Shown one piece after another: positions 41,583-62,493 of a stretch of DNA of 64,000 bases. Source of the DNA: Phaeosaccion multiseriatum (lineage: Eukaryota; Protista; Ochrophyta, other classes); NCBI GenBank assembly GCA_965112735.1, contig OZ218960.1, positions 1,240,001-1,304,000 of the forward strand, read 5' to 3'. Within the stretch, counting starts at the first letter, position 1; every line of letters starts with the position of its first letter. A program made the translations under genes and the position numbers. The notes under the pieces were generated by a model that saw only the letters and a list, made by a program, of their open reading frames with translations, was not told the DNA's origin and made no database searches.

Positions 41583-41943
41583 AGCGAGGGCAGTGTGGTA
41601 GCGCCCGTAAGCAGGGGACGGGGGAGGGGGGATTAGAGGCCACACATGCCCAGAGGCAGTTAGTAGGAGAGGCGTCATCGGAGGGGTGGGCGGGCGGGAC
41701 GGGGCTTTCGCATGATAGACAGCTCTATTTTTGTATAGCAACTAGATGTATACGTGCGGGGGTTCCCTCAAACAGGACAAGAAGAAGAAAGAAAGAAAGA
41801 AGTCTACGACGTGGAAAACATGAAAGTCCAGAGAGAAGGAGGAGAGGGCATGGCTGCGGCTCACTTCTCGGTAAGCAAGGAGGGGGGGGAGGAGGAGAGG
41901 CGCAGCAATAGCGGCTGTAGAAAGACAAGCTGGCTACACGTTC

Positions 41944-43148
41944 TCAACGCTCCCTTGCTGGTAGGGCCGTTGGTGGTACGACTTCGTCTAGCGACCTCGC
42001 CAGCGTGGTTCGCAGGCCCACGGCCTCGTCGACCTTCACCCCATTATGGAGCATTGGGCTCCACCATCTCGCTGCAATAGATGGATACACGGATATATAC
42101 ACAGGCAGAGGAAGCAGTAAGACAAGGAGTATACAAAACACACACACACACACACATGCACGCACACACACACACATGTGTGGCGAATCGGTGCCAAAAG
42201 CTGCCATCGACCCTCACGACCCACCTGGCACCTTACGCTCGTGGTTGTGAAGCATGTCCGCTCCTTTGTTGATGAGGCCCGCATCTCTCTCAAGGCCAGC
42301 CGTGTACGCCACGTTCGTGAGCATCAGCTGCAACGGTCGGTGGTATGGCGGTAGCAGCGGTTGGTGATACAGATTAGCGGCAGCAGTTGGCGACATAGCA
42401 GCAGCAGAAGCAGTAGCAGTTGGTCATACAGGCGTGACAGTTTCACTCCCTCCCTCCCTCCCCCCAACCCATCACTCACTTCTAGATTGTGGAAGTTGCC
42501 AGCGAACTCCATGTCCCCCTTCCAGGCGTCGGGATGCATGACCCAGGGGGTCCAGAACTTGTACAGCAGATCTGTGTGGAGCACATAGCCATCATTGACG
42601 TGGTCCTTGCCGGCCGCCTGTTCAGTTTCAGTTTGAGTTTGCTTGAGCTTATCTAGACCATTGCATCCGTAGATGATTCATGATTGTCAACCAAGAGATC
42701 GAAAAGGCCACCCTCCCTCCCTCCCTCCCTCCCTCCCTTCCTCCCTTCCTGTCTCCCATATTGAACGCGTTCTTACCTCCTTGCCGAGAGGGCCCAGGAA
42801 GGCGCTGACAGGCCCCAGGAGGGACTTGAATGAAGGGGAGAAGCCTGGCCAGAAGACGGGAACGGGGTCGAGGCGTCGCAAATCGCCTACGTGCGTGTAG
42901 CTCTGGCACAACGAATAAGTAGAAGGAGGGAGGCCAAGCCAGAGAGAAGGGGGGGGGGGGCGTTGGTGGCGGTAGGGGTATATTGTGGAGGAGGAGGAGG
43001 AGCAGCAGCAGCAGCAGAGCGAGGAGGAGGAGGACATGGAGGAGGATGAGCAGGAGAAGAAAAAGGAGGACGAGCAGGAGATGCAGCAGCAGCAACAGCA
43101 GTAGTAGGAGTAGGAGGAGGAGTAGGAGAAGAGGAGTAGTAGGAGTAG

Positions 43149-43223
<75 letters not shown>

Positions 43224-43865
43224 GAGTAGTAGTAGTAGTAGGAGGAGTAGTCCGCCCCCACTTACCGGAGCGACGACGTTTAAAGGGGTAGGCACAACGT
43301 CCCCTCTCTGGTAGTAATGCCTGCATAGAGGAGAGGAGGAGGAGGAGGAGGAGGAGGAGGAGGAGGAGGAGGAGGGAGGAGGAGGCGGAGACAAGAAGGA
43401 AGCCAAGAGAAAACAAGATGAGCCACTGTGGTAGTGCTAGAAGAGGAGCAAGTAGTGATACACCAGCAGCAGTAGTTGGTGATACAGTAGACGTCACAGG
43501 CAATGACTGACTACTGGGTGGTCTTCGGGCCTGGTGTTGAGCTACTACCCTAGCGCGGCACCATCCGTGTACTTTACCCTACTCTGCCCTTACTACTCTA
43601 CCCTTCGCATACTCTACCCTACTCTGCCCTTACTACTCTGCCCTACTCTACACACCTGAAGTCGACATTCAAGTCACTGTGGGGTGGTCACGTGGTGATG
43701 ACGAAGGTGCAGGTCAGCAAGGACCACCAGCCAGAGAGCACAGCAGAGCGAAGAGTTAAGGGCACATGGAGGGGCGAGTGAGTGAGTGAGTGAGTGAGGG
43801 AGAGAGGATCAGCGGCAGGGGCACGTCGGGGCACGGTCTGCCTGTCAGTCCAAGAGCGGAGGCTA

Positions 43866-43953
<88 letters not shown>

Positions 43954-45165
43954 GAGAAGTCCTCCCCTCAACCTCACTTCACTCCGCTCCATTCCCGTCC
44001 ACTCAACTCCACGCCCTCGCCCAGGCCCGTTCCCACTCCCCTCCCACCCCCAACTCCACCCCCACTCCACCTTTTCATACCTGAAAGCTTTCTTCAGAGC
44101 CTTGCTCCCTACCGTTGGGCTGCAAAAGACCCTCCCGCGCACCTGCACCAGTCCTCCATCCGAGGCCTTGGCCCACTCCTTCACCTCCTTCTTCGATCCA
44201 TCCTCCGACGCCGCTTGGTACTCCTTGTGCTGGTTGACCTTCAGTACTACGTCAAGGGCGGCGACGGTGGCCAGTGCCGATCCTAGACTGTGTCCGCTCA
44301 TAGTGATGGTGTCTACCTTACCCACACCCTTGTTATCCTTGCTGCCACCAACTTGCAGATACTCCTCAACAACACCCATGACGGAGGCCATCAGCGAAGT
44401 GTCTAACCCAAAGTCCTCCACCACCTTCTTGTCCTGTGCGGGTTGTGCGACGTTTTTGAGCCCAGGGAGGCCTTGGGATACCTGTGTGTGTAAGTCAATC
44501 AACCACGGAGTGCCATCGATTAGAGAACGATGGAAGGAAGGAAGGAAGGAAGGAAGGAAGGAAGGCAGTACTCGACAGGCAGCTTCGCAATCGGTGAATG
44601 CAGCGTGATCACAGTGAGCGGGCCAAGTAACATGATGGTGTGTGTCGACTACAAGACTAACTGCCACTGCTTACCTCAGCCAGGAGGCTGCCGATATCGC
44701 CTGCCCACGAGGAATCGGAGTCCTCGCCCATGCTGGAAAACTCATCGTCGTCCCCATCACGTGAGTAGAGCCCCAAGAACCCCCTGTGAGTGAGTGAGTG
44801 AGTGAGTGAGTGAGTGAGGGAGGGAGAGGAGGAGGAGCAGGGAGATAAGGGGGGGTCAGGAGGAGGAAGAGGAGGAGGGGAAGGGGGAGGAGGAGCAGGG
44901 ACGAGGAGCAGGAGGGGGAGGAGGAGCAGGAGGAGGAGGAGGAGAAGGAGGAGGACGAGGACGAGGAGGAGCCCTCCACCCGTCTTGGCCTCCCGTATGT
45001 ACCTACCTGTGGATGCCAATGTTGTAACACTCCTTGCCCTTGTGCTCTGTTTTGATCGGCAGGAGGGGCATGAGGACGAGCCAGCGCAGCCAAGACACCC
45101 ACTTCTGCTCCCTCTCCTTGCGCTTGTGCCAAAGGACCTGTTTTGCGACCCACCCGTCACACATC

Positions 45166-45230
<65 letters not shown>

Positions 45231-46435
45231 GCAGGCCGACGGAAAGACAGAGAGAGCACAGCATATGGAGGGAGAGGTTGAAGGGGGGGAGAGTAAGGGA
45301 GAGTAGAGGCATATGGGGGAAGAGGGATGTAGAGGCGTATGGGCTTACTCACCATGCCGGCCTTGGCGTCCTCCTGCCACTCCATCGGGGTGAGTGTTCC
45401 TCTGAAGATGATGCTCAGGTCTTTAGTGCTCTCTGAGTAGCCCACAAAGCCGGCGAAGGTGGACTCCGCGGGGTCGGGATCGTCCACAGCCGCCAACAAA
45501 GCACTCGCGGTGGAGTAGAGCACTTTGACAACGACAAAGTCCTCAGGGAGGCTCTTGACGTTGGACTGGGGTGATGGATGCAGGGGGGGGGGGGGAGGGA
45601 GGAAGGGAGGGAGGGACGGAGGGAGAGACACAGAGGAGATGGACAGGCAGTGGGTGAGAGAGAGTCACGGGTGGAAGGAGGGAGGGGGGCGGGGGGCCAG
45701 GGAGAGAGGCAGACATGGAGGCCGCGCGGGGAAGAGGGAGGGGTGTGTACGGTTGCACGAGAGGAAGAGGCGAGGCAGTGCTATGTACGGGTGGGTCTAC
45801 TCATGACAACTGACACGCCCGTCCTCTCCTCCTCCCCCTCCTGTTCCTCTTCTCCCTTCTCCTCGTCCTACCTGTATGAACTTCCCGAGCAGATCTCTGA
45901 TGGCCTTGTTATCGTCATCCAGTTTCCCGTTCCCAAGGATACAGTTCCCGTAGTTTCTGTTCGTCGCCAGTGGGGCAATGGGGGGGGGGGGGGGGGGGAG
46001 GAGGAGAAGGAGAAGGAGCAGCAGAAGAAGAACAAGAAGAAGAAGAAGAAGAAAGAAGAAAGAAGAAAGAAGAAAGAAGAAGAAGAAGAAGAAGAAGAAG
46101 AAGAAGAAGGAGAGAGAAGGACGGCATGTTAGAGAAGCAAGAAGCCGCAATGGGAAGCATCATGGAGATGGAGGAACGGGAGGCAAATATGTATGTAAGC
46201 AGATGGGCAGAGAGTCAGACCGACCCTTCCCCCCCCCCTCTCTCGCTCTCTCTCTCCCTCCCCCTCCTCTCCTCCTACTCACTTGTTGGTCGAGTCAGTG
46301 ACGAAGAGATCGTACACGGCTTGCACCATTTCTCCGTACATTACGTCCCCCCCCACATCATCCGCCCGGAGCATGTCCTCCTTGACCTTTTCCACCTCAT
46401 TGGGCCGCTTTACTCGCATACCGAGGTAGATTCTG

Positions 46436-46469
<34 letters not shown>

Positions 46470-47510
46470 CACACAGAGAGAGAGAGAGACAGACACACAC
46501 AGAGAGAGAGAGAGAGAGTGGTACGAGGGCGGGAGGAGGCGAGATGGGGCGAGGAGCGATGGGAGTGTTCAGAGAGGAAAGGTGTTTCCCCCCTTCCTTT
46601 ACCGCTACGCAGGCCGTTAGTTGTTCACCTTCCCCCACCGCAGCAGCCCCCCCCCACACCCCTCCCCATAGGCCCCAACAGCAGCACTTACTCCAGATAC
46701 TTGTAGACGGAGAGTGCTCCCATCACCACCAATGCACCCACAATGGCCTTCTTGTTGCTTCCCTCGGGGAGCATGTCCACGACTCCGACGAGCTTGGACA
46801 CAGCGCCGAACACGGGACCAAGGAACATTTCTTTCAAGGCACCGACGAGCCCCCCTCCCGCATCGCTGAGTAGGAGGACGAGCGACGGAGGCAGGAGCAG
46901 TAGACGAACAAGAAGATCGGCTCAGCGAGGGTGTGGAGAGGAGGGGGTGTTAGGTATGGATGAGTGAGCCCTTCCTGGCTGCTCTCCATTTCATTTAGCA
47001 CCTTTCGCCACCTCCTCCTCATCCAGCAGCCCAGCAGGTCGCATCGGAGAGGAGGCTTCCTGTGGTATCAATGGTATCAGTAGCCTCCGTTGCCCCCTCC
47101 TGCCGCCTGCATTCGGCTTGCTTAGCTGCACCTTCCCCCAAGCAACATCTCTCCTCCCTTCAAGGAACACTATCGCATCGGAGAGGGAAAGGACTGCTCA
47201 TGTCAGTGCAGACGCACCTGAGGTTCAGCTGCGGCATGTCAATCGTCGACGGGCCAAGAAGGTTGAGTTGCAGAGCGCTTGATGCTGTTGCTGCGGCCTG
47301 TGCACGTGATCCCGGCCCTCGGGATGCTCCATTCGCCCCCCTTCCTGCCAGTGGTCTTCTCTGGCCATATCCTCGGCCTCCGCTGACTGCTGCTGCTGCT
47401 GCAGGTGCAGCTGGATTGAGGAAGGCCGCAGCTGGGGCATCGAGCAGTAGCACACAGAGCACAAGGACGGCTTTGCCCGCGCAGCAACCACCACTACGCA
47501 GCTCAGGCAT
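41944..47510 (-). CDS. Class-3 lipase, plant DAD1/PLA1-like (phospho/galactolipase), putatively plastid-targeted, many exons
   Basis: YGEMVQAVYD, AGFVGYS..IIFRGT..EW.ED, GFLGLY, ITMSGHSLGSALAT, VFCSPTVG, GDVVP, HNLE, RDAGLINKGADML..PRWW..NG. N-terminus VLVLCVLLLDAPAAA-FLNP. Confidence 0.85.
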
Positions 47511-47920
47511 CCTTTTTCTGGAGTGTGATATTCCTTCTCTTCATTTGGCCCCTCGTGCTTTACCTGCATGCTTACCTTGAAGCGGTGAAGAGGTGACGAG
47601 AAGGAAAGTCAGAAAATTTACAACACCCCGAATGACCGCAACTTCGCGTTGCGAAAAACTGGTCGGGGGAGGCACATGTTCCGTGAGAGAGAACCTACGC
47701 CAGTTGGTGATATGATAGGAGGTTCACAGGGTGCTGGCTTCCGTGCGTGCGCGTGCGTGCGCGCGTGTGTGTGTGCGTGTGTATAATGTGTGTGTGATTG
47801 CGTGTGTGTGCCAGGCTCTAACTTGTTCGCAATTCCGGACATGAAGTGTCCATACTCCACTCGGCTTTGGACAAGGTTACAGTGTGTACCAGGCCGAAAA
47901 GAAAGAAAGAAAGGCTGGCT

Positions 47921-48026
47921 GGTCACCGGCTGTAATCAGCAATCAGGCCGGCTGGAGCTGCCGATAATCAGTAATCAAGGCGGGCTGGCGCCATAAAAGG
48001 AATCAGATAATCTTGTCCAGGGCCGA
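47921..48026. repeat. Left arm of imperfect inverted repeat flanking the LOX segment
   Basis: 48001-48026 is 25/26 identical to the reverse complement of 54673-54698. 47935-47955 is 20/21 identical to the reverse complement of 54731-54751. Internal taatcag motifs. Confidence 0.8.
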
Positions 48027-48112
48027 CTCCACACCCAGGGAGCTGCCTGTGCAAGGTGTTGAGGTTTGAACAGGTTGATGACGACCACCACCACGACGAT
48101 GCCGACGACGAC

Positions 48113-49794
48113 GAGGAGGAGGAGGAGGAGGAGGAGGAGGAGGGGGAGGAGGAGGAGGAGGAGGAGCAGGAGGAGGAGGAGGAGGAGGAGGAGGAGGAGG
48201 AGGAGGAGAAGGAGGAGAAGGAGGAGGAGGAGGAGGAGGAGGAGGAGAAGGAGGAGGAGGAGGAGGAGGAGGAGGAGGAGGAGGAGGAGGAGGAGGAGGA
48301 GGAGGAGGAGGAGGAGGAGGAGGAGGAGGAGGAGGAGGAGGAGGAGGAGGAGGAGGAGGAGGAGGAGGAGGAGGAGGAGGAGGAGGAGGAGGAGGAGGAG
48401 GAGGAGGAGGAGGAGGAGGAGGAGGAGGAGGAGGAGGAGGAGGAGGAGGAGGAGGAGGAGGAGGAGGAGGAGGAGGAGGAGGAGGAGGAGGAGGAGGAGG
48501 AGGAGGAGGAGGAGGAGGAGGAGGAGGAGGAGGAGGAGGAGGAGGAGGAGGAGGAGGAGGAGGAGGAGGAGGAGGAGGAGGAGGAGGAGGAGGAGGAGGA
48601 GGAGGAGGAGGAGGAGGAGGAGGAGGAGGAGGAGGAGGAGGAGGAGGAGGAGGAGGAGGAGGAGGAGGAGGAGGAGGAGGAGGAGGAGGAGGAGGAGGAG
48701 GAGGAGGAGGAGGAGGAGGAGGAGGAGGAGGAGGAGGAGGAGGAGGAGGAGGAGGAGGAGGAGGAGGAGGAGGAGGAGGAGGAGGAGGAGGAGGAGGAGG
48801 AGGAGGAGGAGGAGGAGGAGGAGGAGGAGGAGGAGGAGGAGGAGGAGGAGGAGGAGGAGGAGGAGGAGGAGGAGGAGGAGGAGGAGGAGGAGGAGGAGGA
48901 GGAGGAGGAGGAGGAGGAGGAGGAGGAGGAGGAGGAGGAGGAGGAGGAGGAGGAGGAGGAGGAGGAGGAGGAGGAGGAGGAGGAGGAGGAGGAGGAGGAG
49001 GAGGAGGAGGAGGAGGAGGAGGAGGAGGAGGAGGAGGAGGAGGAGGAGGAGGAGGAGGAGGAGGAGGAGGAGGAGGAGGAGGAGGAGGAGGAGGAGGAGG
49101 AGGAGGAGGAGGAGGAGGAGGAGGAGGAGGAGGAGGAGGAGGAGGAGGAGGAGGAGGAGGAGGAGGAGGAGGAGGAGGAGGAGGAGGAGGAGGAGGAGGA
49201 GGAGGAGGAGGAGGAGGAGGAGGAGGAGGAGGAGGAGGAGGAGGAGGAGGAGGAGGAGGAGGAGGAGGAGGAGGAGGAGGAGGAGGAGGAGGAGGAGGAG
49301 GAGGAGGAGGAGGAGGAGGAGGAGGAGGAGGAGGAGGAGGAGGAGGAGGAGGAGGAGGAGGAGGAGGAGGAGGAGGAGGAGGAGGAGGAGGAGGAGGAGG
49401 AGGAGGAGGAGGAGGAGGAGGAGGAGGAGGAGGAGGAGGAGGAGGAGGAGGAGGAGGAGGAGGAGGAGGAGGAGGAGGAGGAGGAGGAGGAGGAGGAGGA
49501 GGAGGAGGAGGAGGAGGAGGAGGAGGAGGAGGAGGAGGAGGAGGAGGAGGAGGAGGAGGAGGAGGAGGAGGAGGAGGAGGAGGAGGAGGAGGAGGAGGAG
49601 GAGGAGGAGGAGGAGGAGGAGGAGGAGGAGGAGGAGGAGGAGGAGGAGGAGGAGGAGGAGGAGGAGGAGGAGGAGGAGGAGGAGGAGGAGGAGGAGGAGG
49701 AGGAGGAGGAGGAGGAGGAGGAGGAGGAGGAGGAGGAGGAGGAGGAGGAGGAGGAGGAGGAGGAGGAGGAGGAGGAGGAGGAGGAGGAGGAGGA
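48113..49794. repeat. ~1.7-kb (GAG)n trinucleotide tract
   Basis: Essentially uninterrupted from about 48250 to 49794. Confidence 0.95.
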
Positions 49795-50367
49795 AGGAGA
49801 CATGGAGGAGGGAGGAGGAAGGAGACATGGAGGAGGAGGAGAAGAAGGAGGAGGAAGGAGGCTCGGAGGAGGAGGATGATGATGTGTTTGGCGAGGCAAA
49901 CGCGGCAGAGCACCCTATCCAAAGCCATCACTCCACTGCCACATCCGCCGACCACTACCATCCCCCATCCACTGCCATCCCTTCCCTCCCTCCCTCCCCT
50001 CCTTTACCGGTACAACTGCAAACCCTGCTCCGCTCTGCTGTGCTGTGCTGCTCCTTCCACCCCACCCAGGAGGCTGTTGGCTGCCCCCAGGCGGGGACCC
50101 GAGACTCGGGAAGATACGGCACTGAACAGAACGCCAAATGCATTACTTAAATCGTGAGTGAGGCAGCACCCGTATTGTAGGGCATTCCGTGGTGGCTGAC
50201 AGCATGACGACTCAGCCTACTGTCTCGTACTGCCTGTACGTAAATGAAAGAGAAGCATGCTCCCGAACCCAACTCAATTATCACCCCAAGCAAAACACTA
50301 CAAGTCAGGCACTCGCAGCTGAGCAGGGGCAAAGCAAGACGGCCCCCTTGCTTCTTCACACTCCATG

Positions 50368-53118
50368 TTAAATGTTGATGCTCGAGGCCACCTTGCTGGG
50401 CAGCAGGACCTCATACGGAATGGTGGCGCCCTCGTTCCGCTTGTTGATGATGAGCTCCACCGCGTCCAAGTTGCGTTTCAAGTTGTTGTACACCGTGGGG
50501 TACTGCGAACGGAACTCCACCCACTCAATCGGATTGTTCGAGTTGGGGATGCGCTCGCCAATCTGGTCCAAGGTGGGGTTCTCAGGCGAGGCCAAGAGCC
50601 AAGACACCAGTCCCTGGAAGACGGCGATTCCAAACCCGCGCGGATCGGTGCCACCGGGCACAGCAGCGAGGATATCAGCCGTGGTGATGTCCTCCTCGCC
50701 GTCGGGAACGCCCGCGAAGATGGAAGCAGGGCGGTTGATTGGGGTCGCCGTGTACGGGTATTGCACATAGTTGAGGGCCGAGTGTTGAGCAGAGGCTGCC
50801 CAGACGATGGTGGTGAGCACCTTGACGAGCAACTGCTTCTCCGCAATACTCTCCGGAAAGCCGGAAATGTCCGCCTTGGTACACGCCTCGGTGCACCACT
50901 CTTGAATAATCTTGTCTGCCTTCACGTCCGCGTCGGACTCGTAGATTTCATCAACCATGTCCGAGCAGTAGCTCCACAAGGTGTCCCAAATGAGGTATCC
51001 GTCATCACGATAGCGGTACCCCTTAAACTCGTCACTGCGGCTAAAGCCGCGCTTAGCCAGCTCGTCAGGCAGCCCCCATGTCATGAAATCGTAGTCGACA
51101 AAGGCCTCCTCGATCAGTTGCACCCCCTGAGCGGTGCCGACGGCAAGGGTTCCATCCGTAATGGCGCCTTCATCCGCCACGAGAGTTTGGCGCCCCAGGT
51201 AGTTGATGCCGATGCTGCCGCGAAAGTGAGGCTTGAGGAAGTCCCCGAGGGGGTGCTTGTTCTTCTCCAGCACGTTGTGGCACGCAACAACCATCGGCTC
51301 GACGGCCAGGTGCGTAAAGCCCAGGTGGTTGGTGAACTGATGGACTTGATTGTCAGCGCAGTTGACATGCAGCTTGGCGAAGAGGTACTTGTTGGGTGTG
51401 CTCGAATCCGGCGTGTACACAGGCGCATCCTCCCTCTCCGGCTCCAACAGAATCCCCAGGACGGAGAGCTCCTCGGCACCAGTGCGGTAGATCAACATGG
51501 TTGGAGCATAGAGTGTGACGCCGTTGAGGTTCAGATCCATATGGCGGAGGGGCTTGTAGTCCAAGACGTAGAGACGCTTCTCCTCCACGAGCTTGTCCAC
51601 GTCCGAGCCATCCTTCGCCTTGAGTGCGAGGAGCTTGGCGGGAAGACCGGCCTTGTCCTCGCCCCCCACCACTCGGGCTTGGATAGGGTTGAGGCCAGCA
51701 AAGATTTGCCGGAGGAACTCCTCGTCTTGCGCCCAAAGGTTGTTGTTCAGGATGCTCGGTATCGGAATGTGTCCTCCTTTGCCCTCCTTTGAGAAGTAAG
51801 CGGCATAGCGCTCGTAGGTGCTGGCCACCGGGATGAGCCGACGTTGCAGATCGAACTGCGTCTCAATGTACTCGAAGATAGCGTTGAAGATAAGCCCAAC
51901 CTTGCGAGGAGGAAGCACCTCCGAGCGGGGCAGACCCTTGACGTTGGTGGGCAGGCCTGCTGCCTTGCGGGCGTACTCCCAAACGGGCAGCTCCGGTGCC
52001 GAAGCGAACTTGAGAATGTCAAACGCACGACTCTTGAGGAGATCGACTGCTCCCTGTAGCTTCTTGAGCGACTGCACCTCCTGCTGGGCCTTGGACAGGG
52101 GCAAGACGTCACCTGTTCGCAAGGTCAGCTCCAGGTCCACAGTCACTGTGGCACCCTCCTTGCCGCCTTCAAGGTCCAGCGTCATCGTGACGGGCTCACC
52201 ACTGGTGAGGCCCTCCTTCTGAATGTCTACAACGGCGTTGCCGAGCCACCTGTCGATGCCCATCTCACGCTCGTACACTGTGATGAGGGCCTTGCTATCC
52301 TCCTTCAGCACGTCGAAGCAAACGGGCGCGGCGCGAAAGGAAGGAGAGCTTCCAAACTCCTTGGACTTGACGGTTACCGGCGGCGCTCCGTCCACGGCAA
52401 TGTTGGCGTAGGATGTAACCAAGAGGTTGGACGAGAGATTCTCCCCACTGACCACCGTCACGTCCAGCGTGCCCAGGGAAGGATTGATCGTACTCTGCAA
52501 GTGATCAATCCCATCCTTGTAGCCTTTCGCTTGGGCGCCGACAAGCATGTTGACGGCGGGGGAGTCGGTCCAAGAGCGCCACAAAACGTTTGTTGAGTCA
52601 CCGTTGGCAGTGAGAGAAACCACCGTCTGGATAGCCTCAATCTTGAACGGAAGGCCTTTCATCGAGACGAGGTCGTAGCGCAACACATAATTGCTGGGGT
52701 CACGGGCCACCAACACTTCCTTGGTGGTCAAGCTGGGGCGGTCCTTGAAGACGAAAGTGCGGGTGTCGCCAATGTCGTTGCCCGTAGACTCATAGTCGGT
52801 GTAGATGGGCCACCAGTCGTTCATGCCCTCGAAGTTGGAGAGGAGTCCCCACACCTTGTCGATGGGTGCATCGACCGTTCCAGTAGCAATGGCAGTGGCG
52901 GTACCGTCGGGAATGGTCGCCGCTGTGGCGGCAGGAGGAGCAAGGGTGTGTGAAGCTCCTGCTGCTGCTGCTGGTGTTGAACTTTTCGCAGATGCCCGCG
53001 CCATCGACTGGCGACTGCTGACAGGGGAGTGGTCGAAGGGCGCGATGGGTGCGAACCCCTCTGACAGCAGGGTAGTGGTCGCGGCCGCGATGGCCAGGAC
53101 CATCAGCTGGAGCCTCAT
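50368..53118 (-). CDS. LOX: Lipoxygenase with N-terminal SRPBCC/START-like and C2 domains; putatively plastid-targeted; intronless CDS (916 aa)
   Basis: MRLQLMVLAIAAATTTLLSEG-FAP presequence; VDAPIDKVWGLLSNFEG..WWP..GDTRTF (SRPBCC); GTLDVTVVSGENL..ITVYE..DRWLGNAVVDI (C2); WAQDEEFLRQIFAGLNP, HQFTNHLGFTH, HPLGDFLKPHF, YRYRDDG, QHSALN and C-terminal SINI (all iron ligands). Confidence 0.95.
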   Translation of the reverse strand: MRLQLMVLAIAAATTTLLSEGFAPIAPFDHSPVSSRQSMARASAKSSTPAAAAGASHTLAPPAATAATIPDGTATAIATGTVDAPIDKVWGLLSNFEGMNDWWPIYTDYESTGNDIGDTRTFVFKDRPSLTTKEVLVARDPSNYVLRYDLVSMKGLPFKIEAIQTVVSLTANGDSTNVLWRSWTDSPAVNMLVGAQAKGYKDGIDHLQSTINPSLGTLDVTVVSGENLSSNLLVTSYANIAVDGAPPVTVKSKEFGSSPSFRAAPVCFDVLKEDSKALITVYEREMGIDRWLGNAVVDIQKEGLTSGEPVTMTLDLEGGKEGATVTVDLELTLRTGDVLPLSKAQQEVQSLKKLQGAVDLLKSRAFDILKFASAPELPVWEYARKAAGLPTNVKGLPRSEVLPPRKVGLIFNAIFEYIETQFDLQRRLIPVASTYERYAAYFSKEGKGGHIPIPSILNNNLWAQDEEFLRQIFAGLNPIQARVVGGEDKAGLPAKLLALKAKDGSDVDKLVEEKRLYVLDYKPLRHMDLNLNGVTLYAPTMLIYRTGAEELSVLGILLEPEREDAPVYTPDSSTPNKYLFAKLHVNCADNQVHQFTNHLGFTHLAVEPMVVACHNVLEKNKHPLGDFLKPHFRGSIGINYLGRQTLVADEGAITDGTLAVGTAQGVQLIEEAFVDYDFMTWGLPDELAKRGFSRSDEFKGYRYRDDGYLIWDTLWSYCSDMVDEIYESDADVKADKIIQEWCTEACTKADISGFPESIAEKQLLVKVLTTIVWAASAQHSALNYVQYPYTATPINRPASIFAGVPDGEEDITTADILAAVPGGTDPRGFGIAVFQGLVSWLLASPENPTLDQIGERIPNSNNPIEWVEFRSQYPTVYNNLKRNLDAVELIINKRNEGATIPYEVLLPSKVASSINI

Positions 53119-54543
53119 ATTGGACCTGTGACAAAAAAATGTTCCGTGGAAGAGCAACATGATAGGGAGCGAGTGAGGAGGGTAGCAGGGAGGACAATGC
53201 ATGCAGCCAGGGCTGGTGTTGGCCCCTGCTGCCTCTTCCCTCCCCGCCGTGTCAAAAGCTGCCCGCCCCTTTCGCTACATGGAGGCCGCCGCCCAAGGCA
53301 CAAGAAGAACAGCATTGGACCGCTCCTCCCCCTCCCCTCGCTCCCTCCCCACTGCTCGAGTCGAGACTCGCAGCAGAGCGATGCATGTGGTGAAGAAGGG
53401 CCACATACACCAGGTCACGCAACCGCCCCTTGAAGCTGCCCCCATCTTAGTAAACAAGCCCAACCCTGCACGGAACCCACTCCCCCCCCCCCCTCTCCCC
53501 TCTTCTTCCTCACGTTCGGCTCTTGGTTCTTCCTGCTGCTCCCTCGTCTGCCCCTCCTGTCCTGCCTGCTGGGGTGGCCCGCCCCTCGGCCTCTCTCAGC
53601 AGCAACAACCCTGCAGACCGCAGTCGCCTGCCTTCTTGCTTTGCTCCTGCATGCCAGAAAGGGAGGAGAAGAGAAGGAAGTGCATTTCACTTAGGAGTGT
53701 TCAGGCAGATCAAAAATAATAGCGGACCCCGTACCTCTCGCTCCTCCTCCTCCAATACCCTGCAAACACGACTTGCAAACGCCTTCTCCACTCTGGCTCT
53801 TTTGCTTGTATCGCCCACCAGACAAGGGGGGGGGCATTAGCCAGCAGTCTGCAAAAAAGCTTCAAGCTTCCGTCGGAGAGAAAACGGCGCGAAAATTAGG
53901 ATTGGGGAGAGAGCAAGGGGTAGCAATTGGGAGAGGATTAAAACAATAATTGACATCAAGCCTCCGCTGTGGTGCCCGCTGCTGCTGCGGCATTGCTCAA
54001 TCCAATTGCAACCAGCAGCAGCACAACTGCAATCCAACAATTGCAGCAGCAACAACAGCAGCAGCCAAAGCAATGGTAAGAATCTCGGCAGAATCTCGAG
54101 GGGTGTCGAGGGTGCTGCTGGGTAGACAGGAGGCGAGAAGCAAGAGATGAGAGAGCCTGCTCGAGAGAGAGTGCTTTACATCTGCTCTTCGTCTTCTCAG
54201 GCGGCACAGGGTCAGCCCCCCTCTCGCTGATTGGATGACCATGGTGCTGTTGGGGCTGGGGGGACGGAGGGGACGGAAGGAGGGAGGGAGGGAGGGAGGG
54301 TCGACCCCTGACGTGCTACCTGCTACCGCCGGCACCAGCCGGCATGCGACCTACCACCGCATCCGGCCTTGATCTGCTACCAGCCGACCAGGCAGCCGAC
54401 CGGCCAACCATTTTCAGTTTTCAGTTTTCAGGAAAAAAAAAAGCTTGAAGGCCAACCAGCCGGCCGGCCAAACATCAGCTGCCACCGCCGGCATGAGCTA
54501 GCTGCTACCTCCTCCCTCGATGCATGCCCAGCGCAGGTCTCTG

Positions 54544-56557: not shown

Positions 56558-59500
56558 TGTGGTGGGTGTTGTGTTGCGTTGTGTCGTGTTGTTTCTCGCG
56601 CCGCAGATGATGCAAGAGCCGGACCTGTTGTGGAGCCCTTGGTTTCGGATAATAATGGAGCGCTTCGCCTTTGCGTGGTGGGCAGACCTCAAAACATGTA
56701 TGGCGACAGACAAGTATGTGGACGTGGAAACCATCCATCGTTTCGATCCTCCCAAGGAGCACCGAGGCGGGGCGGGTGTAACAGGGGTGCTCGAGAAGGA
56801 GGGAGAAGGAGAGGGGAAGCTCGATGGAGACAAGAAGCAGGGCGGGTACGGAAAGGTGAGGAGGAGGGGGACGGAGGACGAGGAGGAGGGGGAAGAGAAG
56901 GGGGGGGGGGGGGGCGATGGAGGAGGAGGAGGAGGAGGAGGAGGAGGAGGAGGAGGAGGTGGAGGAGGAGGAGGGGGAGGAGGAGGAGGAGGAGGTGGAG
57001 GAGGAGGAGGGGGAGGAGCAGGAGGAGCAGGAGGAGCAAGAGAAGACGGGAGAAGACGGAAGAGACCAGACCTGCCCTTTGCGGAAACGAACAAGTGTTG
57101 TGAAGCATACTCTCTCTCTCTCACACACCTGACGGTGTTCCAATGTGGACCCCCTCAGGTACCCATTTTGTCAGACCCCAAGTGGAAGCAGCTCTGCCAT
57201 CTCGACGAGGTGCTCGCAGCCTTGGCCTTCAAGTCGATAGGCCAGATGAGCAGCAAGATAGACACGAGCCCTGAGATAGACGGCTTCAAGCATGTGAAGT
57301 TTTGCGATAAGATGCTCGGGAAGGTCAGCAGGTCTTTCGCAGCTGTCATTCGCCAGCTGCCCAAGGTTAGTGAGGTTGGGAGGGAGGGAGGGAGAGGGAG
57401 TGAGGGACGGAGGGAGGGAGGGAGAGAAGGAATGAAGCCAATTACGTTCAATCATTCAGCCCATAACCTCCAACCCACAACCCCCATCCACTGCCATCCA
57501 CTGCCATGCACTACCATCCACCATCCCCACGCCCCCCTCAGGAGCTCTGCTTGGATATCCTCATCTTCTACTTGGTGCTGCGAGCGCTGGACACCATTGA
57601 GGACGACATGAGTGCTTTCCCTGACCCCAAGGACAAGATCGCTCACTTACAGACATTCTACAAGGTGGCGCTGAAGGATCCAAACTGGAGTATGGATGGG
57701 GTCGGGGAGGGGGATGAGAAGGTGCTGCTGCAGTGCTTTGGGAGAGTGGCCTCGGTAAGTGGGGTGGGAGGAGGAGGAGGAGGGAGGAGAAGGGGGCTTG
57801 GGAGTTTTTAGTTTTGAGAAGAGTTGTCTAGAAGAACGATCACTCATTTCCCTTGCTGTGCTGTCGTCTGCCTGCTGCTGCCTGCCCACCTTTTCACGAT
57901 GGCAAAACAACAAAAACAAACAAACAAACAAAACAAAACAAACAAAAGGTGTACCTGACACTGCCTCAGACAAGCCAAGACGTCATCGCCGACATCACCA
58001 TGCGCATGGGTGCAGGCATGGCGGAGTTTGTCAACAAGGACCTCGGCCAGGGTACCGACAAGGTTGCTGACTACGATCAATACTGCCACTACGTGGCCGG
58101 GCTGGTAGGGCACGGGTTGAGTCGGCTCTTCTCGGCAACGGGTGTGGAGGGGCCGGAGGTCGGGGAGGAGCTGGCGCTGGCAAACTCCATGGGGCTGTTT
58201 TTGCAGAAGACCAACATCATTCGGGACTATTTAGAGGTATGTAGGAGAAGGTATTTGGAAGGTATTTGGATGTTTTTGCAGAAGACCAACATTATTCGGG
58301 ACTATTTAAGGTATATAGGGGAAGGTATTTGGAAGGTATTTGGATGTTCTTGCAGAAGACCAACATCATTCGGGACTATTTAGAGATGTGTAGGGGAAGG
58401 TAGGAAGGAAATGGGATGTATATTGGCGTATGTATATGTATGTATATTGTTGGAATGTTTTCCGTGTGGAGGGTGTGCAAGGGAGAGCGTGACGTCATTG
58501 GGTGTGTGGGTGGGGTTGGGGGCCTGGGATTTGGATTTGATTTTTGACTCATTTCCGAATCTTTTTTTGTATTTCGGCGCTAGAGCCGCTCCTCTCGAGC
58601 CTCTTCCTGTCACTTATCCTCCCATCTCTCTCTCTCTCTCTCTCTCCCCCTCTCTCTCTCTCTCTCTCTCTCCGTCTCTCTCTCTCTCCCTCTCTCTCCC
58701 CCTCTCTGTCTCTCTCTGTCTCTCTCTCTCTTTCATCTTCTCTTTCTCTCCTCTCTCTCCCTCCCTCCCTCCCTCCCTCTCTCCGTCTCGCCCTCCCTCC
58801 TGCTCTCCCTCTCCCTTTCCCTCCCTCTCTCCACCTCTCTCCCCCCCTCCTCCCCCCCTCCCCTCCCTCCCTCCCTCCCTCTCTCCCTCCCACTTTTTCT
58901 TGTATCCCTTTTCAACTAAAGGATTATGTGGACGGGCGTGCGTTTTGGCCGGCGGAGGTGTGGAAGAAGTACAGCAAGACCGGCCAATTGGGAGAATTCG
59001 CCTTGCCCAAATTCCAGAGCGGGGTGAGTGAGTGAGTGGCCCGGCGGGCGGCCGCGGGCGGGCGGGTGGGTGAGAGAAGATGGAGGGAGGGAGGGAGGGA
59101 GGGGACATGCATCATCACCATCATTCACCCTCTCCTCTCCTTTCATCCCTCCCTGCACCATCATTGCACATCGCTGGACCCACCCACCTTCCCCCCTTCC
59201 TCGCTTTCGCCATCATGGCTTTATAACCCCCCCCCCCACACACGCACCCACCCAGGCTCTGGCCTGTCTGAACCACCTCGTCACGGACGCATTGGAGCTG
59301 GTGCCGGACTGTTTCGCTTACATGGAGGGCCTGCACAACGAGGAGGTGTTCAGCTTTTGCGCCATCCCGCAGGTACACGACTTTGTTGCTTGGGGTTGGG
59401 GACCAAGTGGTGGGTGTTGGGGGTGTTGGTGCGCGAGGTTGGGTACCGGCCCTTTTTGAGTGAATCGAAGAGTTGAAAGTCATGTGCGCAAGCCTTCGAA

Positions 59501-61155: not shown

Positions 61156-62231
61156 TTATTTACCGTAGGAGGAGCGCGACCCCCGTGGGGAGGTACATGC
61201 GCCGCCTCCGCCCATCTTCTCCACCACTCCCATATCCTCTATAAACTCAAATTTGTTCTCCAGCATGTCATTTCTATATGCCTCCAAGAAGGCCGAGAAG
61301 GAGTGCCCTACTTCGTCCCCCAGCCCCTCGTCGGAGTCGAACTCGAACACTGCGCCATTGGCTTGAGTGTCTAGCACCTGTTCGTACGTATGGGAGCAAG
61401 GTATTTCGTCACAGCGGGCGGGGAGGATGAGACGTGTGAGGAGGTGCCATATGGGACTTGGTGTTTCGCTGAATGTAGGGGGTACATGGGAAGAGGAGAG
61501 GCGTTATGGACAATATGCGAGTCGGTCGACCCTCGAGAATGTAGAAAGGGAAAGTGTGGTGCCTATACGTGAGAGAGTACTAGTGTGGAGGATTTTTGAT
61601 TCGTCATCGATCGATCCATCCATCGATCGGTCCATCAGCCGAGAAGGACGAAAACAGCAAGCAGGGCCGTAGATGTCCATAGAAAGAAAGAGAAGGGCCT
61701 GCACTCACAAACATGTTGCTGTCGCAGTCGGAGGCAAAGGGCACAAGCCCCTCTCTCCAGCCCTTGGGGCTCTCCGAGTCGAGATCATTAATCATCTTGC
61801 ACATTGCCTCATGTGTTAGTGCCTGCTTGTCGTAGAACCAAATCTGACCGTTCTGCTCGTGTTTCGCGCACCAGTCATAGGGGTCAGAGGTGTACATGTG
61901 GAGAAGCATTATCAGGCCAGTTAGTTGGGACTTGCACTGTTCGTTTGTTTGTCAGGAGGGATGGACAGACAGATGATGCCGAACCTGCTGGGCGCAGAGG
62001 GTCTTAAAACCCTTGGGAAGCCCCCCTCCACATGTCTTCTCGAGCGTCTGAATGTCCTCTGGGGTGGCGGGGTCACCATCCTCTAGAACTATGCTGGAGC
62101 ACCGCGTGAACCAAGCGCACACATCTGCACAGCGAGAGGAGAGAACGGAAGATGAGAAGGTGGTCGTTCCCCCACGGCCCTTTCCTTCTTTCCTTACCTA
62201 AGACGCACTGCTGTATTTCGTCTATTGACAT
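61156..62231 (-). CDS. SMI1/KNR4 (SUKH)-like protein (about 4 exons)
   Basis: PATPEDIQTLEKTCGGGLPKGFKTL..NGQ..W..GLVPFASDCDSNMF|VLDT..GAVFEFD..SFSAFLEAY..LE. Confidence 0.7.
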
Positions 62232-62493
62232 GCTTCCCCTCCTCCGGTTCCCCTCCACCGCAACAGTCACCATGTTGCCACTACGTCAGGCCGTGGAGAG
62301 CACCGTGACGAAGCAAGAGAACGGCGGGATGGTGGGGGCGAGTCAACCGTCCGGTGAAGAACCAACGTTTGTACCTGTGAATCCGTTACTTTTTTCACGG
62401 GAGATGCATCTGATCTGTGGAGCCATTGACTTCCTTCTCTACCTTCTGAATTGGCCTGCATTGCATGGTTCGCTAGAGAGCGCTGGCACTGCC

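What the first reader, a model, noticed from the sequence alone, without database searches (positions are those of the whole stretch)
41944..53118. Putative plastid oxylipin mini-cluster: DAD1-like lipase immediately beside a lipoxygenase
Seen: two consecutive genes on the same strand with no recognisable gene between them, a GHSLG class-3 lipase and a complete LOX. The lipase carries plant PLA1-type motifs (YGEMVQAVYD, RD.GLINKG.D.L..P.WW). Both start with a signal peptide + F-type presequence (AAA-FLNP; SEG-FAP). Known: in plants, DAD1/DGL-type plastid lipases release PUFA from membrane lipids and LOX oxygenates it (first two steps of jasmonate/oxylipin synthesis), and wound-activated lipase-LOX cascades occur in diatoms. 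Those genes are not normally neighbours. Inference: a physically linked release-and-oxygenate module for defence or signalling oxylipins in an ochrophyte plastid.
Basis: partly seen in the sequence, partly recalled or inferred. Interest (0 to 1): 0.82.

Follow-up and report, generated by a model that had tools for sequence, protein, structure and literature searches.

The report
Neighbouring lipase and lipoxygenase genes
In this alga a plant-type lipase gene lies next to a bacterial-type lipoxygenase gene, and because relatives of both genes are also found paired with a lipoxygenase or a lipase in another alga and in bacteria, the two probably work together to turn chloroplast membrane fats into oxidised signal or defence compounds, which is still unproven.

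Summary
On the minus strand lie a 14-exon class-3 lipase gene (41944-47510, about 708 aa, intact Ser-Asp-His triad) and an intronless lipoxygenase (LOX) gene (50368-53118, 916 aa, all iron ligands). Only a 2.9-kb spacer, mostly a (GAG)n microsatellite, separates them.

- **Lipase family:** its nearest named relatives are plant PLA1/DAD1-type enzymes. The only close homologue among 1.84 billion representatives is in Chrysoparadoxa australica, where it sits next to two LOX genes of a different subfamily.
- **LOX type:** it is an SRPBCC-C2-LOX fusion that branches among myxobacterial enzymes. In four of six bacterial relatives' loci a lipase gene lies directly beside the LOX (patatin in three, class-3 in one).
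- **Targeting:** both window proteins, the Chrysoparadoxa lipase and its neighbouring LOX, and the closest algal LOX homologue all start with a hydrophobic signal followed by small-x-small|Phe, the ochrophyte plastid pattern.

So a linked hydrolase-plus-LOX module is well supported by comparative genomics. Plastid location is plausible. Expression, enzyme activity and reaction order are untested, because no RNA run was available.

The scan found this arrangement before on another piece of this same genome (s1-338370). This is therefore a second locus, not a first discovery. I rate it a new variant of a known pathway, of moderate interest.

The parts
41944..47510 (-). Class-3 (plant PLA1/DAD1-like) lipase gene with 14 exons: 47510-47218, 46865-46692, 46432-46283, 45956-45872, 45565-45353, 45137-45007, 44783-44675, 44481-44081, 43676-43656, 43320-43266, 42902-42777, 42617-42480, 42327-42225, 42071-41944. 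The coding sequence is 2127 nt, about 708 aa.
   Evidence: Hand model. All 13 introns are GT-AG, 152-404 nt long and mostly C/T-rich. Exons 3-14 are collinear with the Chrysoparadoxa gene in L009. Exons 3, 5, 7 and 8 are collinear with plant PLA1 proteins.
47424..47510 (-). Lipase N-terminal signal-peptide-like segment (MPELRSGGCCAGKAVLVLCVLLLDAPAAA). Phe30 follows at 47421-47423, then an Ala/Gly/Arg/Ser-rich stretch with no acidic residue.
   Evidence: the most hydrophobic 12-mer has mean KD 2.85. The candidate cleavage site is APAAA|FLNPA, and the next 40 residues hold 6 R+K and 0 D+E. The Chrysoparadoxa orthologue begins MRVIGTFLLSGVALPAFA|FQAP.
46692..46865 (-). Lipase exon 2, with hydrophobic segments (…AIVGALVVMGALSVYKYL) that are a probable membrane anchor. 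Plant PLA1s lack this.
   Evidence: Translation. The acceptor was chosen by phase and polypyrimidine tract. A comparable hydrophobic open frame lies at L009:912-1034. The transmembrane role is an inference.
44281..44295 (-). Nucleophile elbow GHSLG. The catalytic Ser codon is 44287-44289.
   Evidence: Pfam Lipase_3. It aligns to the GHSLG of Arabidopsis PLA1-IIgamma 2yij.
43299..43301 (-). Predicted catalytic Asp, in HYYQRGDVVP of exon 10.
   Evidence: It aligns to NYIERGDIVP of P0026, which in turn aligns to the DIVP of plant PLA1 7x0d.
42489..42491 (-). Predicted catalytic His, in FAGNFHNLE of exon 12.
   Evidence: It aligns to FAGDWHNLQ of P0026, which in turn aligns to the WHLLE of 7x0d.
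47511..50367 (.). Intergenic spacer of 2857 bp. A (GAG)n array of about 585 units at 48113-49876 makes up 1764 bp of it. No recognisable gene lies here.
   Evidence: Tandem Repeats Finder. Open frames here are homopolymeric only. The one longer complex open segment, 47621-47935, has no Pfam hit.
50368..53118 (-). Intronless SRPBCC-C2-lipoxygenase gene, 916 aa from Met 53118. The frame stays open upstream to an ATG at 53202.
53056..53118 (-). LOX N-terminal signal-peptide-like segment (MRLQLMVLAIAAATTTLLSEG). Phe22 follows at 53053-53055, then a Ser/Thr/Ala-rich, net basic stretch up to the SRPBCC domain.
   Evidence: Bacterial homologues lack this extension, while the algal-type homologue P0001 starts MMKTSILFTLLAAALHNLPHAHA|FSL.
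52489..52887 (-). SRPBCC (Bet v 1-like) lipid or ligand-binding domain of the LOX.
   Evidence: Pfam PF10604 at 2.2e-13. In the AlphaFold model, residues 1-137 have pLDDT around 90. Foldseek matches PYL receptors and YPO0625 with TMt 0.6-0.79.
52180..52473 (-). C2-like beta-sandwich domain of the LOX.
   Evidence: Pfam C2 at E = 8.3e-4 and 20 bits, just under the 22-bit cut-off, with full-length model coverage. Homologues P0027, P0003 and L007 score above the cut-off. Model residues 142-259 match the extended-synaptotagmin C2A domain 7as6 with TMt 0.73.
50371..51783 (-). Lipoxygenase catalytic domain, with H598, H603, H779, N783 and the C-terminal Ile916.
   Evidence: Pfam. The columns are invariant in A1. 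The nearest solved structures are human 5-LOX at 1e-44, 12-LOX, and coral, cyanobacterial and Pseudomonas LOXs, matching the catalytic part only.
50323..50343 (+). One arm of a 21-nt inverted repeat that brackets the LOX gene alone. The other arm is at 53630-53650.
   Evidence: The arms are 19/21 complementary and are the only two copies in the window. Their meaning is unknown.
53630..53650 (-). Second arm of the 21-nt inverted repeat that brackets the LOX gene.

Best explanation
These are two adjacent, separately transcribed nuclear genes of an ochrophyte (stramenopile) alga that together form an acyl-hydrolase-plus-lipoxygenase module.

The genes:
- Gene 1 encodes a probably membrane-anchored class-3 lipase. 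It belongs to the same family as plant PLA1/DAD1 enzymes and has a complete Ser-Asp-His triad.
- Gene 2 encodes an intronless lipoxygenase. Its lineage was acquired from myxobacteria-like bacteria and its base composition has since become host-like. Two N-terminal domains precede the catalytic domain: an SRPBCC lipid-binding domain and a C2 membrane-docking domain.
- Both proteins start with a signal peptide followed by Phe at the predicted cleavage site and a transit-peptide-like stretch. This is the pattern that sends proteins into the ochrophyte plastid.

Most likely mechanism (inferred, not shown):
1. On wounding or stress, the lipase frees polyunsaturated fatty acids from plastid galacto- or phospholipids.
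2. The LOX, held at the same membrane by its C2 domain, dioxygenates them to hydroperoxides.
3. If it resembles the characterised red-algal SRPBCC-LOX (PhLOX), it may carry them further to volatiles or ketols.

Adjacency keeps the two genes inherited together, and possibly regulated together. The same pairing logic is seen in the bacterial operons of this LOX lineage, but there the lipase is unrelated.

Shown here: gene integrity, domain architecture, family placement, and recurrent lipase-LOX adjacency. Inferred: plastid location, substrate, reaction order, co-regulation.
For: 1. Both genes are intact: LOX and lipase.
2. The lipase belongs to the plant PLA1 family. The best solved matches are PLA1-IIgamma 2yij and 7x0c for exon 8. 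For its orthologue P0026 they are 7x0d at 3.5e-10 and 2yij at 1.2e-7, against 0.19-0.76 for fungal lipases. The nearest named proteins among 5.8 billion are plant PLA1s. Matches to plant PLA1s are collinear, exon by exon.
3. Linkage recurs independently.
   - The only hit for exon 8 among 1.84 billion representatives is P0026 of Chrysoparadoxa australica.
   - That gene is collinear with exons 3-14. It lies next to two LOX genes on a 23-kb contig.
   - Those LOX genes belong to a different, intron-rich subfamily.
4. Bacterial relatives of this LOX have a lipase gene directly beside them.
   - Patatin follows at a gap of 10-31 bp for P0003, P0005 and the Myxococcales MAG L007. The two patatin proteins compared, from L001 and L007, are 53% identical.
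   - A class-3 lipase lies divergently 331 bp from P0006.
5. The window LOX groups with two metagenomic algal-type homologues (100/100 support). That group branches inside a clade made up mainly of myxobacterial SRPBCC-LOXs.
6. Its composition is host-like: GC3 is 0.755, against 0.703 for the lipase exons and 0.85-0.93 for the bacterial genes.
7. The SRPBCC and C2 folds are confirmed by Pfam and by AlphaFold plus Foldseek.
8. The signal-peptide-plus-Phe pattern is present in all five algal N-termini examined. These are the window lipase, the window LOX, the Chrysoparadoxa lipase, the first Chrysoparadoxa LOX and P0001. The bacterial LOXs lack it.
9. Literature: wound-activated lipase-to-LOX cascades fed by chloroplast glycolipids are established in diatoms (reference list of PMC7024367). 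SRPBCC-LOX of Pyropia is multifunctional and of bacterial origin (PMC11507377).
Against: - There is no transcript evidence. The only runs that hold this DNA are DNA contig sets. Expression, splicing and co-regulation are therefore unknown.
- Targeting was judged by hand-made criteria, not by SignalP, ASAFind or HECTAR.
- The LOX has two further in-frame ATGs upstream (53202 and Met14 of that frame). Starting at either would bury the signal peptide.
- The genes are 2.9 kb apart, so they are not an operon.
- Gene orientation differs between the window (tandem) and Chrysoparadoxa (convergent), and the partner LOX subfamily differs too. The two adjacencies may therefore have arisen separately.
- Of the six bacterial relatives' loci, two show no lipase. 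Enhygromyxa salina has none within its flanks. P0004 has none downstream and its upstream side is cut off by the contig end.
- The window holds no further oxylipin enzyme.
- Only two species carry this lipase lineage in the databases searched.
- A 21-nt inverted repeat brackets the LOX alone. The LOX may therefore have arrived by a mobile element rather than by selection for linkage.
Confidence: 0.6

Rival explanations
1. The two enzymes are the same partners but act in the opposite order. The LOX docks on the membrane through its C2 and SRPBCC domains and oxygenates esterified acyl chains. The lipase then removes the oxidised chains, either to release a signal or to repair the membrane.
For: The LOX carries two lipid- and membrane-binding domains in front of the catalytic domain. 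The lipase appears membrane-anchored (exon 2). A secreted bacterial LOX (Pseudomonas) oxygenates membrane phospholipids directly (abstract of PMC5764228, listed).
Against: Nothing in the sequence decides the order. The characterised SRPBCC-LOX of Pyropia was assayed on free fatty acids (PMC11507377). Diatom cascades are described as lipase first (reference list of PMC7024367).
Confidence: 0.15
2. The two genes are neighbours but functionally independent. The adjacency would be a by-product of chance, of local duplication, or of insertion of a mobile LOX-carrying element beside a lipase gene.
For: A 21-nt inverted repeat (19/21 complementary) brackets only the LOX gene. An earlier scan note (s1-343360, not checked by me) describes another LOX of this genome as lying between the terminal inverted repeats (TIRs) of a transposon-like element. 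The LOX is intronless in an intron-rich neighbourhood. The window and Chrysoparadoxa differ in gene orientation and in partner LOX subfamily.
Against: Adjacency of a lipase and a LOX recurs in this window, reportedly at a second locus of this genome (s1-338370), in Chrysoparadoxa, and in four of six bacterial loci with two unrelated lipase families. Both window proteins carry the same kind of targeting signal. The inverted repeat is short, does not extend, and has no visible target-site duplication.
Confidence: 0.15
3. The pair works together but not in the plastid stroma or thylakoid. The signal peptides would send both proteins to the ER or secretory route, the periplastidial compartment or the cell surface, for example for an extracellular or wound-released defence reaction.
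For: Only the signal-peptide-like part is strongly hydrophobic. No predictor could be run. The LOX has Glu at -2 and Gly at -1, which is less typical than Ala-x-Ala. The lipase has a second hydrophobic segment that could act as a membrane anchor in any endomembrane.
Against: Phe sits exactly at +1 in five of five algal N-termini, and S/T/A-rich, net basic stretches follow it. Brown-algal LOXs have been predicted plastidial by ASAFind (PMC5712309). The PUFA-rich substrate lipids are plastidial in diatoms (Cutignano 2006, cited in PMC7024367).
Confidence: 0.2
4. One of the two genes is a decaying or unexpressed copy, or the lipase model is partly wrong, so no working pair exists at this locus.
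For: There is no RNA support. Exons 1, 2 and 6 have only weak outside support. Introns are full of microsatellites.
Against: The LOX frame is open for 944 codons with every ligand conserved. The lipase has 14 exons in consistent phase with canonical splice sites, no internal stop and an intact triad. Even the 21-nt exon 9 is matched in Chrysoparadoxa (DLNVDF against ELDVTL).
Confidence: 0.07

Closest known systems
Plant DAD1-like phospholipase A1 family (for example Arabidopsis PLA1-IIgamma, PDB 2yij/7x0c, and the PLA1 of PDB 7x0d)
   Same: Class-3 alpha/beta hydrolase with GHSLG, a DxVP Asp and an HxLE His. It has the N-terminal YGE..QA.YD.F motif and the C-terminal RD..L(I/V)NK…VP..WW motif. 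These plant enzymes are the best solved and best named matches. Class I plant members are plastidial and feed LOX (established knowledge of jasmonate synthesis).
   Different: Identity is only about 25-35%. The window protein is about 708 aa, against 400-530 aa in plants. It has an ochrophyte bipartite presequence instead of a simple transit peptide. It carries an extra hydrophobic anchor (exon 2) and an insert (exon 6). Its close relatives are known only from Chrysoparadoxa. Activity and positional specificity are untested.
SRPBCC-lipoxygenases of marine bacteria and Bangiales red algae (Pyropia haitanensis PhLOX/PhLOX2, Shewanella violacea SvLOX; PMC11507377, PMC4319731)
   Same: An N-terminal SRPBCC domain plus a second beta-barrel sits in front of a roughly 480-aa LOX domain. 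Total length is about 900 aa. The eukaryotic host's copy is of bacterial origin.
   Different: I had no PhLOX or SvLOX sequence, so direct relatedness was not tested. The window LOX branches with myxobacterial enzymes. It also has an ochrophyte plastid-type presequence. No lipase neighbour is mentioned in that paper ('lipase' occurs 0 times).
Myxobacterial SRPBCC-C2-LOX / patatin operons (contigs L001-L003, L007 and the P0005 contig)
   Same: The LOX architecture is the same, at 41-44% identity. A lipid acyl hydrolase gene lies immediately beside the LOX.
   Different: The bacterial partner is a patatin-like phospholipase 10-31 bp downstream, in what looks like an operon. Here the partner is an unrelated, intron-rich, plant-type class-3 lipase 2.9 kb away with its own promoter. 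To my knowledge this bacterial pairing is not described in the papers I could search.
Brown-algal prokaryote-like LOX family (Ectocarpus, Saccharina; PMC5712309)
   Same: These are ochrophyte LOXs. Some are predicted plastidial by ASAFind, and many are tandemly duplicated. The two LOX genes next to the Chrysoparadoxa lipase resemble this type in length (678 aa) and intron richness. Their membership of the family was not tested.
   Different: They are 650-730 aa with 15-20 introns. The Chrysoparadoxa genes of this kind show only the LOX Pfam domain. The window LOX has no intron and two extra domains. That paper does not mention lipases.
Wound-activated lipase-LOX cascade of diatoms (Pohnert 2002, Cutignano 2006 and Adelfi 2019, as cited in PMC7024367)
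   Same: The proposed chemistry is the same: an acyl hydrolase frees PUFA from chloroplast glycolipids or phospholipids and a LOX oxygenates it.
   Different: The diatom hydrolases identified so far are patatin-like or PLA2-type. No physical linkage of the genes has been reported there.

Membership tests
Class-3 lipase (Pfam Lipase_3) | Profile match above the curated cut-off, including the GxSxG nucleophile elbow | tested here: met
   Exon 8 alone scores 27.8 bits against a cut-off of 22, at E = 2.7e-6, and contains GHSLG.
Plant DAD1-like PLA1 family | Ser-Asp-His triad in the family's conserved contexts (GHSLG, D-[IV]-VP, H-x-L-E) | tested here: met
   The window has GHSLG in exon 8, RGDVVP in exon 10 and FHNLE in exon 12. 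They align through P0026 to plant PLA1 7x0d and 2yij.
Plant DAD1-like PLA1 family | Family-specific flanking motifs: N-terminal YGE..QA.YD.F and C-terminal RD..LVNK…VP..WW | tested here: met
   GEMVQAVYDLFVTDSTNK matches GDFCQATYDAFNNDSNSK of Helianthus PLA1. RDAGLINKGADML…VPARWW corresponds to RDISLVNK…IPPLWW of 7x0d, through P0026.
Plant DAD1-like PLA1 family | Plant PLA1s are the nearest relatives in unbiased searches | tested here: met
   In the PDB, plant PLA1s rank first and fungal lipases are far weaker. Among 5.8 billion proteins, the only named hits to P0026 are plant PLA1s. No phylogeny was built, so orthology to any plant class (I, II or III) is not shown.
Plant DAD1-like PLA1 family | sn-1 acyl hydrolase activity on glycerolipids | not testable with these tools
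   Needs a recombinant enzyme assay.
Lipoxygenase (Pfam PF00305) | Profile match, the metal ligands (two His on the HxxxxH helix, then His and Asn) and a C-terminal Ile | tested here: met
   Pfam at 1.1e-55. H598, H603, H779, N783 and the C-terminal I916 are invariant in A1. The nearest solved LOXs score 1e-44 and weaker.
SRPBCC-(C2)-LOX fusion type (bacterial and red-algal PhLOX type) | N-terminal SRPBCC domain followed by a second beta-barrel before the LOX domain | tested here: met
   PF10604 at 2.2e-13. C2 scores 20 bits against a cut-off of 22 but covers the full model, and homologues score above the cut-off. The AlphaFold model has pLDDT around 90 for both domains. Foldseek finds Bet v 1/PYL folds and the extended-synaptotagmin C2A domain.
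SRPBCC-(C2)-LOX fusion type (bacterial and red-algal PhLOX type) | Sequence relatedness to the characterised members PhLOX and SvLOX, and multifunctional (HPL/AOS) activity | not tested
   No PhLOX or SvLOX sequence was on hand. Activity needs an assay.
Ochrophyte bipartite plastid-targeting presequence (ASAFind logic) | A predicted signal peptide with F, W, Y or L at +1 of the cleavage site, followed by a transit-peptide-like stretch | tested here: inconclusive
   A manual screen found a hydrophobic core (mean KD 2.1-2.85), small residues at -1 and -3, Phe at +1, and S/T/A-rich net basic sequence after it. This held in five of five algal N-termini. SignalP, ASAFind and HECTAR are not available, and the LOX start codon is not fixed by RNA.
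Eukaryotic metabolic gene cluster | Adjacent non-homologous genes for consecutive steps of one pathway | tested here: met
   The lipase and LOX genes are neighbours with no gene between them. That the steps are consecutive is inferred from the known lipase-LOX cascade. There are only two genes, which is fewer than the three or more usually required.
Eukaryotic metabolic gene cluster | Co-expression of the clustered genes | not testable with these tools
   No RNA run holds this DNA. The contigs laid on it are genomic.
Eukaryotic metabolic gene cluster | Linkage conserved or recurrent in other genomes | tested here: met
   In Chrysoparadoxa, the lipase orthologue lies next to two LOX genes. Bacterial relatives of this LOX lie next to a patatin or class-3 lipase gene.

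The most novel reading that the evidence does not exclude
An ochrophyte took up a myxobacterial SRPBCC-C2-lipoxygenase, gave it a plastid presequence, and keeps it beside a native plant-type plastid lipase. This would re-create in a eukaryotic nucleus the 'hydrolase next to LOX' arrangement of the donor's operon, but with a non-homologous lipase. Selection for lipase-LOX linkage would then act across bacteria and at least two ochrophyte classes. If the LOX is multifunctional like red-algal PhLOX, these two genes alone would form a complete pathway from membrane lipid to volatile or ketol oxylipins.
Probability: 0.35. Interest if true: 0.75.

Novelty: new variant of a known kind. Interest (0 to 1): 0.6.

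Why it matters
- **Rare kind of cluster.** Functional gene clusters are uncommon in eukaryotic algae. No genes for the first, lipid-releasing step of algal oxylipin synthesis are firmly assigned outside a few diatom patatin-like enzymes.
- **Testable candidates.** A lipase-LOX pair that recurs in two ochrophyte lineages and, with other lipase families, in bacteria gives guilt-by-association support that this lipase lineage feeds or follows LOX. It offers named candidates for wound- and grazing-activated defence chemistry.
- **Evolutionary point.** A horizontally acquired enzyme has ended up beside a host gene that fills the role of its lost bacterial operon partner.
- **Practical point.** A two-gene module with a possibly multifunctional LOX is an easy target for expression and biocatalysis.

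Tried and rejected
- **Word-index search with exon 8**: nothing found. The length window of 167-530 aa excludes a 708-aa protein.
- **Exhaustive HMMER search with exon 8**: one hit only. This was useful, but it shows the lineage is barely sampled.
- All lipase evidence is exon by exon.
- **RNA evidence:** The look-up of sequencing runs returned only five runs, none recorded as RNA. Laying four of them on 41800-47650 showed intron-covering genomic contigs and repeat-induced false joints, with no splice joints.
- **Metagenome survey for more lipase-LOX pairs:** A degenerate DNA pattern for GHSLGSxLATxAALD found eight loci. All are other class-3 lipases no closer than plant PLA1, and none has a LOX in its flanks.
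- **Genome-contig scan with the LOX alignment:** only two named bacteria, a Myxococcales MAG and Enhygromyxa salina.
- **Contigs of the closest algal-type LOX homologues** (P0001, P0002 and P0027): 2.3-3.5 kb, too short to show neighbours.
- **Is the class-3 lipase beside bacterial P0006 an orthologue of the window lipase?** No. Only the GHSLG region matches.
- **Is L009 the same genome as the window?** Rejected. There is no nucleotide similarity, and GC is 0.505 against 0.579. No Chrysoparadoxa protein appears among the LOX hits.
- **Literature look-up of the assembly accession:** blank.
- **PDB search with the first exon of the Nudix-containing gene upstream:** blank.
- **Inverted repeats around the P0001 LOX:** none flank it, but the contig flanks are too short to judge.
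- **Scan-notes look-up by sequence:** blank.

Full report
**What is in the window.** The region is eukaryotic nuclear DNA with about 58% G+C and microsatellite-rich introns. On the minus strand, 50368-53202 is one uninterrupted frame. Pfam finds a lipoxygenase domain at 1.1e-55 and an N-terminal Polyketide_cyc2/SRPBCC domain at 2.2e-13. Downstream on the same strand I rebuilt the lipase gene from the sequence. It has 14 exons between ATG 47510 and a stop ending at 41944. All 13 introns are GT-AG. The exon phases are consistent and the coding sequence is 2127 nt, about 708 aa. Exon 8 holds GHSLG and passes Pfam Lipase_3 by itself. Between the genes lie 2857 bp, of which 1764 bp are about 585 GAG units. 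No other gene is recognisable there.

**The lipase.**
- A word-index search with exon 8 found nothing.
- An exhaustive HMMER search of 1.84 billion representatives found one protein at E ≤ 0.001. It is P0026, an unnamed 268-aa product of Chrysoparadoxa australica.
- P0026 is collinear with window exons 8-14, including the 21-nt exon 9.
- The DNA upstream of P0026 in its locus L009 matches exons 3-7 in order. The Chrysoparadoxa annotation therefore splits one orthologous gene into three models.
- Against solved structures, exon 8 and P0026 hit plant phospholipases A1 first. P0026 scores 3.5e-10 against 7x0d and 1.2e-7 against 2yij, while fungal lipases score only 0.19-0.76.
- The only named proteins found with P0026 among 5.8 billion are plant PLA1s. 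These align collinearly to window exons 3, 5, 7 and 8.
- The triad is complete: Ser in GHSLG, Asp in RGDVVP and His in FHNLE.

This is a divergent, rarely sampled member of the plant PLA1/DAD1 family. It differs from the plant enzymes by an extra hydrophobic segment (exon 2) and an insert (exon 6).

**The lipoxygenase.**
- All metal-ligand positions and the C-terminal Ile are conserved.
- The middle region matches Pfam C2 over the whole model. It scores 20 bits against a cut-off of 22, and homologues pass the cut-off.
- An AlphaFold model of the N-terminal 386 residues has pLDDT around 90 over two domains. Foldseek matches the first to Bet v 1/PYL-type SRPBCC proteins (TMt 0.6-0.79). It matches the second to the extended-synaptotagmin C2A domain (TMt 0.73).
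- The closest relatives are two metagenomic proteins at 61-68% identity. Next come 41-44% identical proteins with the same architecture on G+C-rich, gene-dense bacterial contigs.
- A scan of one genome per prokaryotic species found the type in a Myxococcales MAG and in Enhygromyxa salina.
- In a maximum-likelihood tree the window LOX groups with the two metagenomic proteins (100/100). This group is sister to the Nannocystaceae-type bacterial enzymes (96/94). The Myxococcales MAG enzyme lies outside, and all of these are separated (100/100) from the 5-LOX and Kangiella-type LOXs.
- The gene has no intron, whereas its neighbour has 13. Its composition is host-like: GC3 is 0.755, against 0.85-0.93 in the bacteria.

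The simplest reading is an old transfer from a myxobacterium-like donor. The same fusion type, also attributed to bacterial transfer, is characterised in the red alga Pyropia. There PhLOX combines LOX, hydroperoxide-lyase and allene-oxide-synthase activities and needs its SRPBCC domain (PMC11507377). I could not test direct relatedness to PhLOX.

**Is the adjacency meaningful?** Three independent lines say yes.
1. In Chrysoparadoxa the orthologous lipase is followed 487 bp later, in convergent orientation, by two LOX genes on a 23-kb contig. They are intron-rich (the complete one encodes 678 aa) and are not close to the window LOX. In length and intron number they resemble the brown-algal LOX family (PMC5712309). 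L009 comes from a different genome from the window. There is no nucleotide similarity and G+C is 50.5%.
2. Bacterial relatives of the window LOX have a lipid hydrolase gene directly beside them.
   - A patatin-like phospholipase starts 31 bp after P0003, 22 bp after P0005 and 10 bp after the MAG enzyme.
   - The patatins beside P0003 and the MAG enzyme are 53% identical, although their LOXs are deeply diverged.
   - P0006 has a class-3 lipase divergently 331 bp upstream. That lipase is not an orthologue of the window lipase.
   - Enhygromyxa has no lipase within its flanks. P0004 is cut off upstream by the contig end.
3. That follow-up also noted the bacterial LOX-lipase habit.

Three unrelated hydrolase families next to LOX genes, in bacteria and in two algae, are hard to explain without functional coupling. 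A rough estimate puts chance adjacency of one given pair of small families at the order of 1e-3 per locus. That figure is inference, not computed from a gene census.

**Targeting.** The lipase starts with a strongly hydrophobic core, then APAAA|F and an acid-free Ala/Gly/Arg/Ser stretch. The LOX from Met 53118 reads MRLQLMVLAIAAATTTLLSEG|FAP, followed by about 55 Ser/Thr/Ala-rich, net basic residues before the SRPBCC domain. The same design appears in:
- the Chrysoparadoxa lipase (…ALPAFA|FQAP);
- the first Chrysoparadoxa LOX (…GASQG|FLPP);
- P0001 (…PHAHA|FSL).

The bacterial LOXs start directly at the SRPBCC domain. This fits the ochrophyte signal-peptide-plus-Phe rule, but it is a manual judgement. 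The LOX start codon is supported only by alignment with P0001.

**What remains open.**
- No RNA data exist for this DNA in the runs served.
- The order of the two reactions cannot be read from sequence. The C2 and SRPBCC domains would also suit a LOX that attacks esterified lipids, with the lipase acting second.
- A 21-nt inverted repeat (19/21) brackets the LOX gene alone, at 50323-50343 and 53630-53650. Together with scan note s1-343360 this raises the possibility that the LOX moves as cargo of a TIR element. The repeat is short, has no visible target duplication, and could not be compared with other loci.
- No further oxylipin enzyme lies within 25-64 kb.

**Verdict.** This is a chimeric pair of a plant-type lipase and a horizontally acquired myxobacterial-type LOX. 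Its linkage echoes the donor lineage's operons and recurs in a second ochrophyte. I found no paper describing lipase-LOX gene linkage in algae or the myxobacterial LOX-patatin pairing. The underlying lipase-to-LOX chemistry is well known, and the scan has already flagged a sister locus in this genome.

Noticed in passing
window:48113-49876: A very long, 97% pure (GAG)n microsatellite of about 585 units fills most of the spacer between the two genes. Introns of the lipase also carry many di-, tri- and tetranucleotide arrays.
   Followed up: no
window:50323-50343 and 53630-53650: A 21-nt inverted repeat (19/21 complementary) brackets the LOX gene alone. These are the only two copies in the window. 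This may be a remnant of a mobile element that carried the LOX.
   Followed up: partly
window:55308-55790 (+) and 57832-58380 (+): Divergent from the LOX lie open segments with a NUDIX domain (7.5e-7) and, 2 kb further on, a squalene/phytoene synthase domain (5.8e-18), on the same strand. From memory, diatoms have a fused IPP-isomerase/squalene-synthase gene. Whether this is one fused gene was not checked.
   Followed up: partly
window:58160-58382: Three tandem 74-nt copies lie inside the squalene/phytoene-synthase region. Copies 2 and 3 are 95% alike. Each ends in …TTTTTGCAGAAGACCAACATCATTCGGGACTATTTA, which looks like a repeated intron end plus exon start (family D12).
   Followed up: no
window:40299-41582 (+) and 62152-63456 (+): Two DUF202 membrane-protein genes flank the lipase-LOX-isoprenoid stretch. 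They are old paralogues, 36% identical over the DUF202 part, with an 81% identical 58-nt core.
   Followed up: partly
P0008 and its cluster (lamprey proteins): Lampreys (Lampetra, Petromyzon, Lethenteron) encode a LOX that is 37% identical to the window LOX. It falls in the clade of myxobacterial and algal SRPBCC-LOXs, apart from the three vertebrate 5-LOXs included in the tree. Its branch is long and its composition deviates, so the placement is unsure.
   Followed up: no
L009:462-5311 (Chrysoparadoxa australica, GCA_964200425.2 contig CAXMZZ020000766.1): The public annotation splits the lipase orthologue into three gene models (462-803, 1189-1990, 3107-5311).
   Followed up: partly
L001:2794-3717 (also in L002 and L003): In the P0003 operon a stand-alone 307-aa SRPBCC protein is encoded directly upstream of the SRPBCC-C2-LOX. 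The order is SRPBCC protein, then LOX, then patatin.
   Followed up: no
window:36063-37711 (-): Open frames with EGF-like domains (EGF_2, EGF_Teneurin) suggest a secreted or surface protein gene 4 kb beyond the lipase.
   Followed up: no
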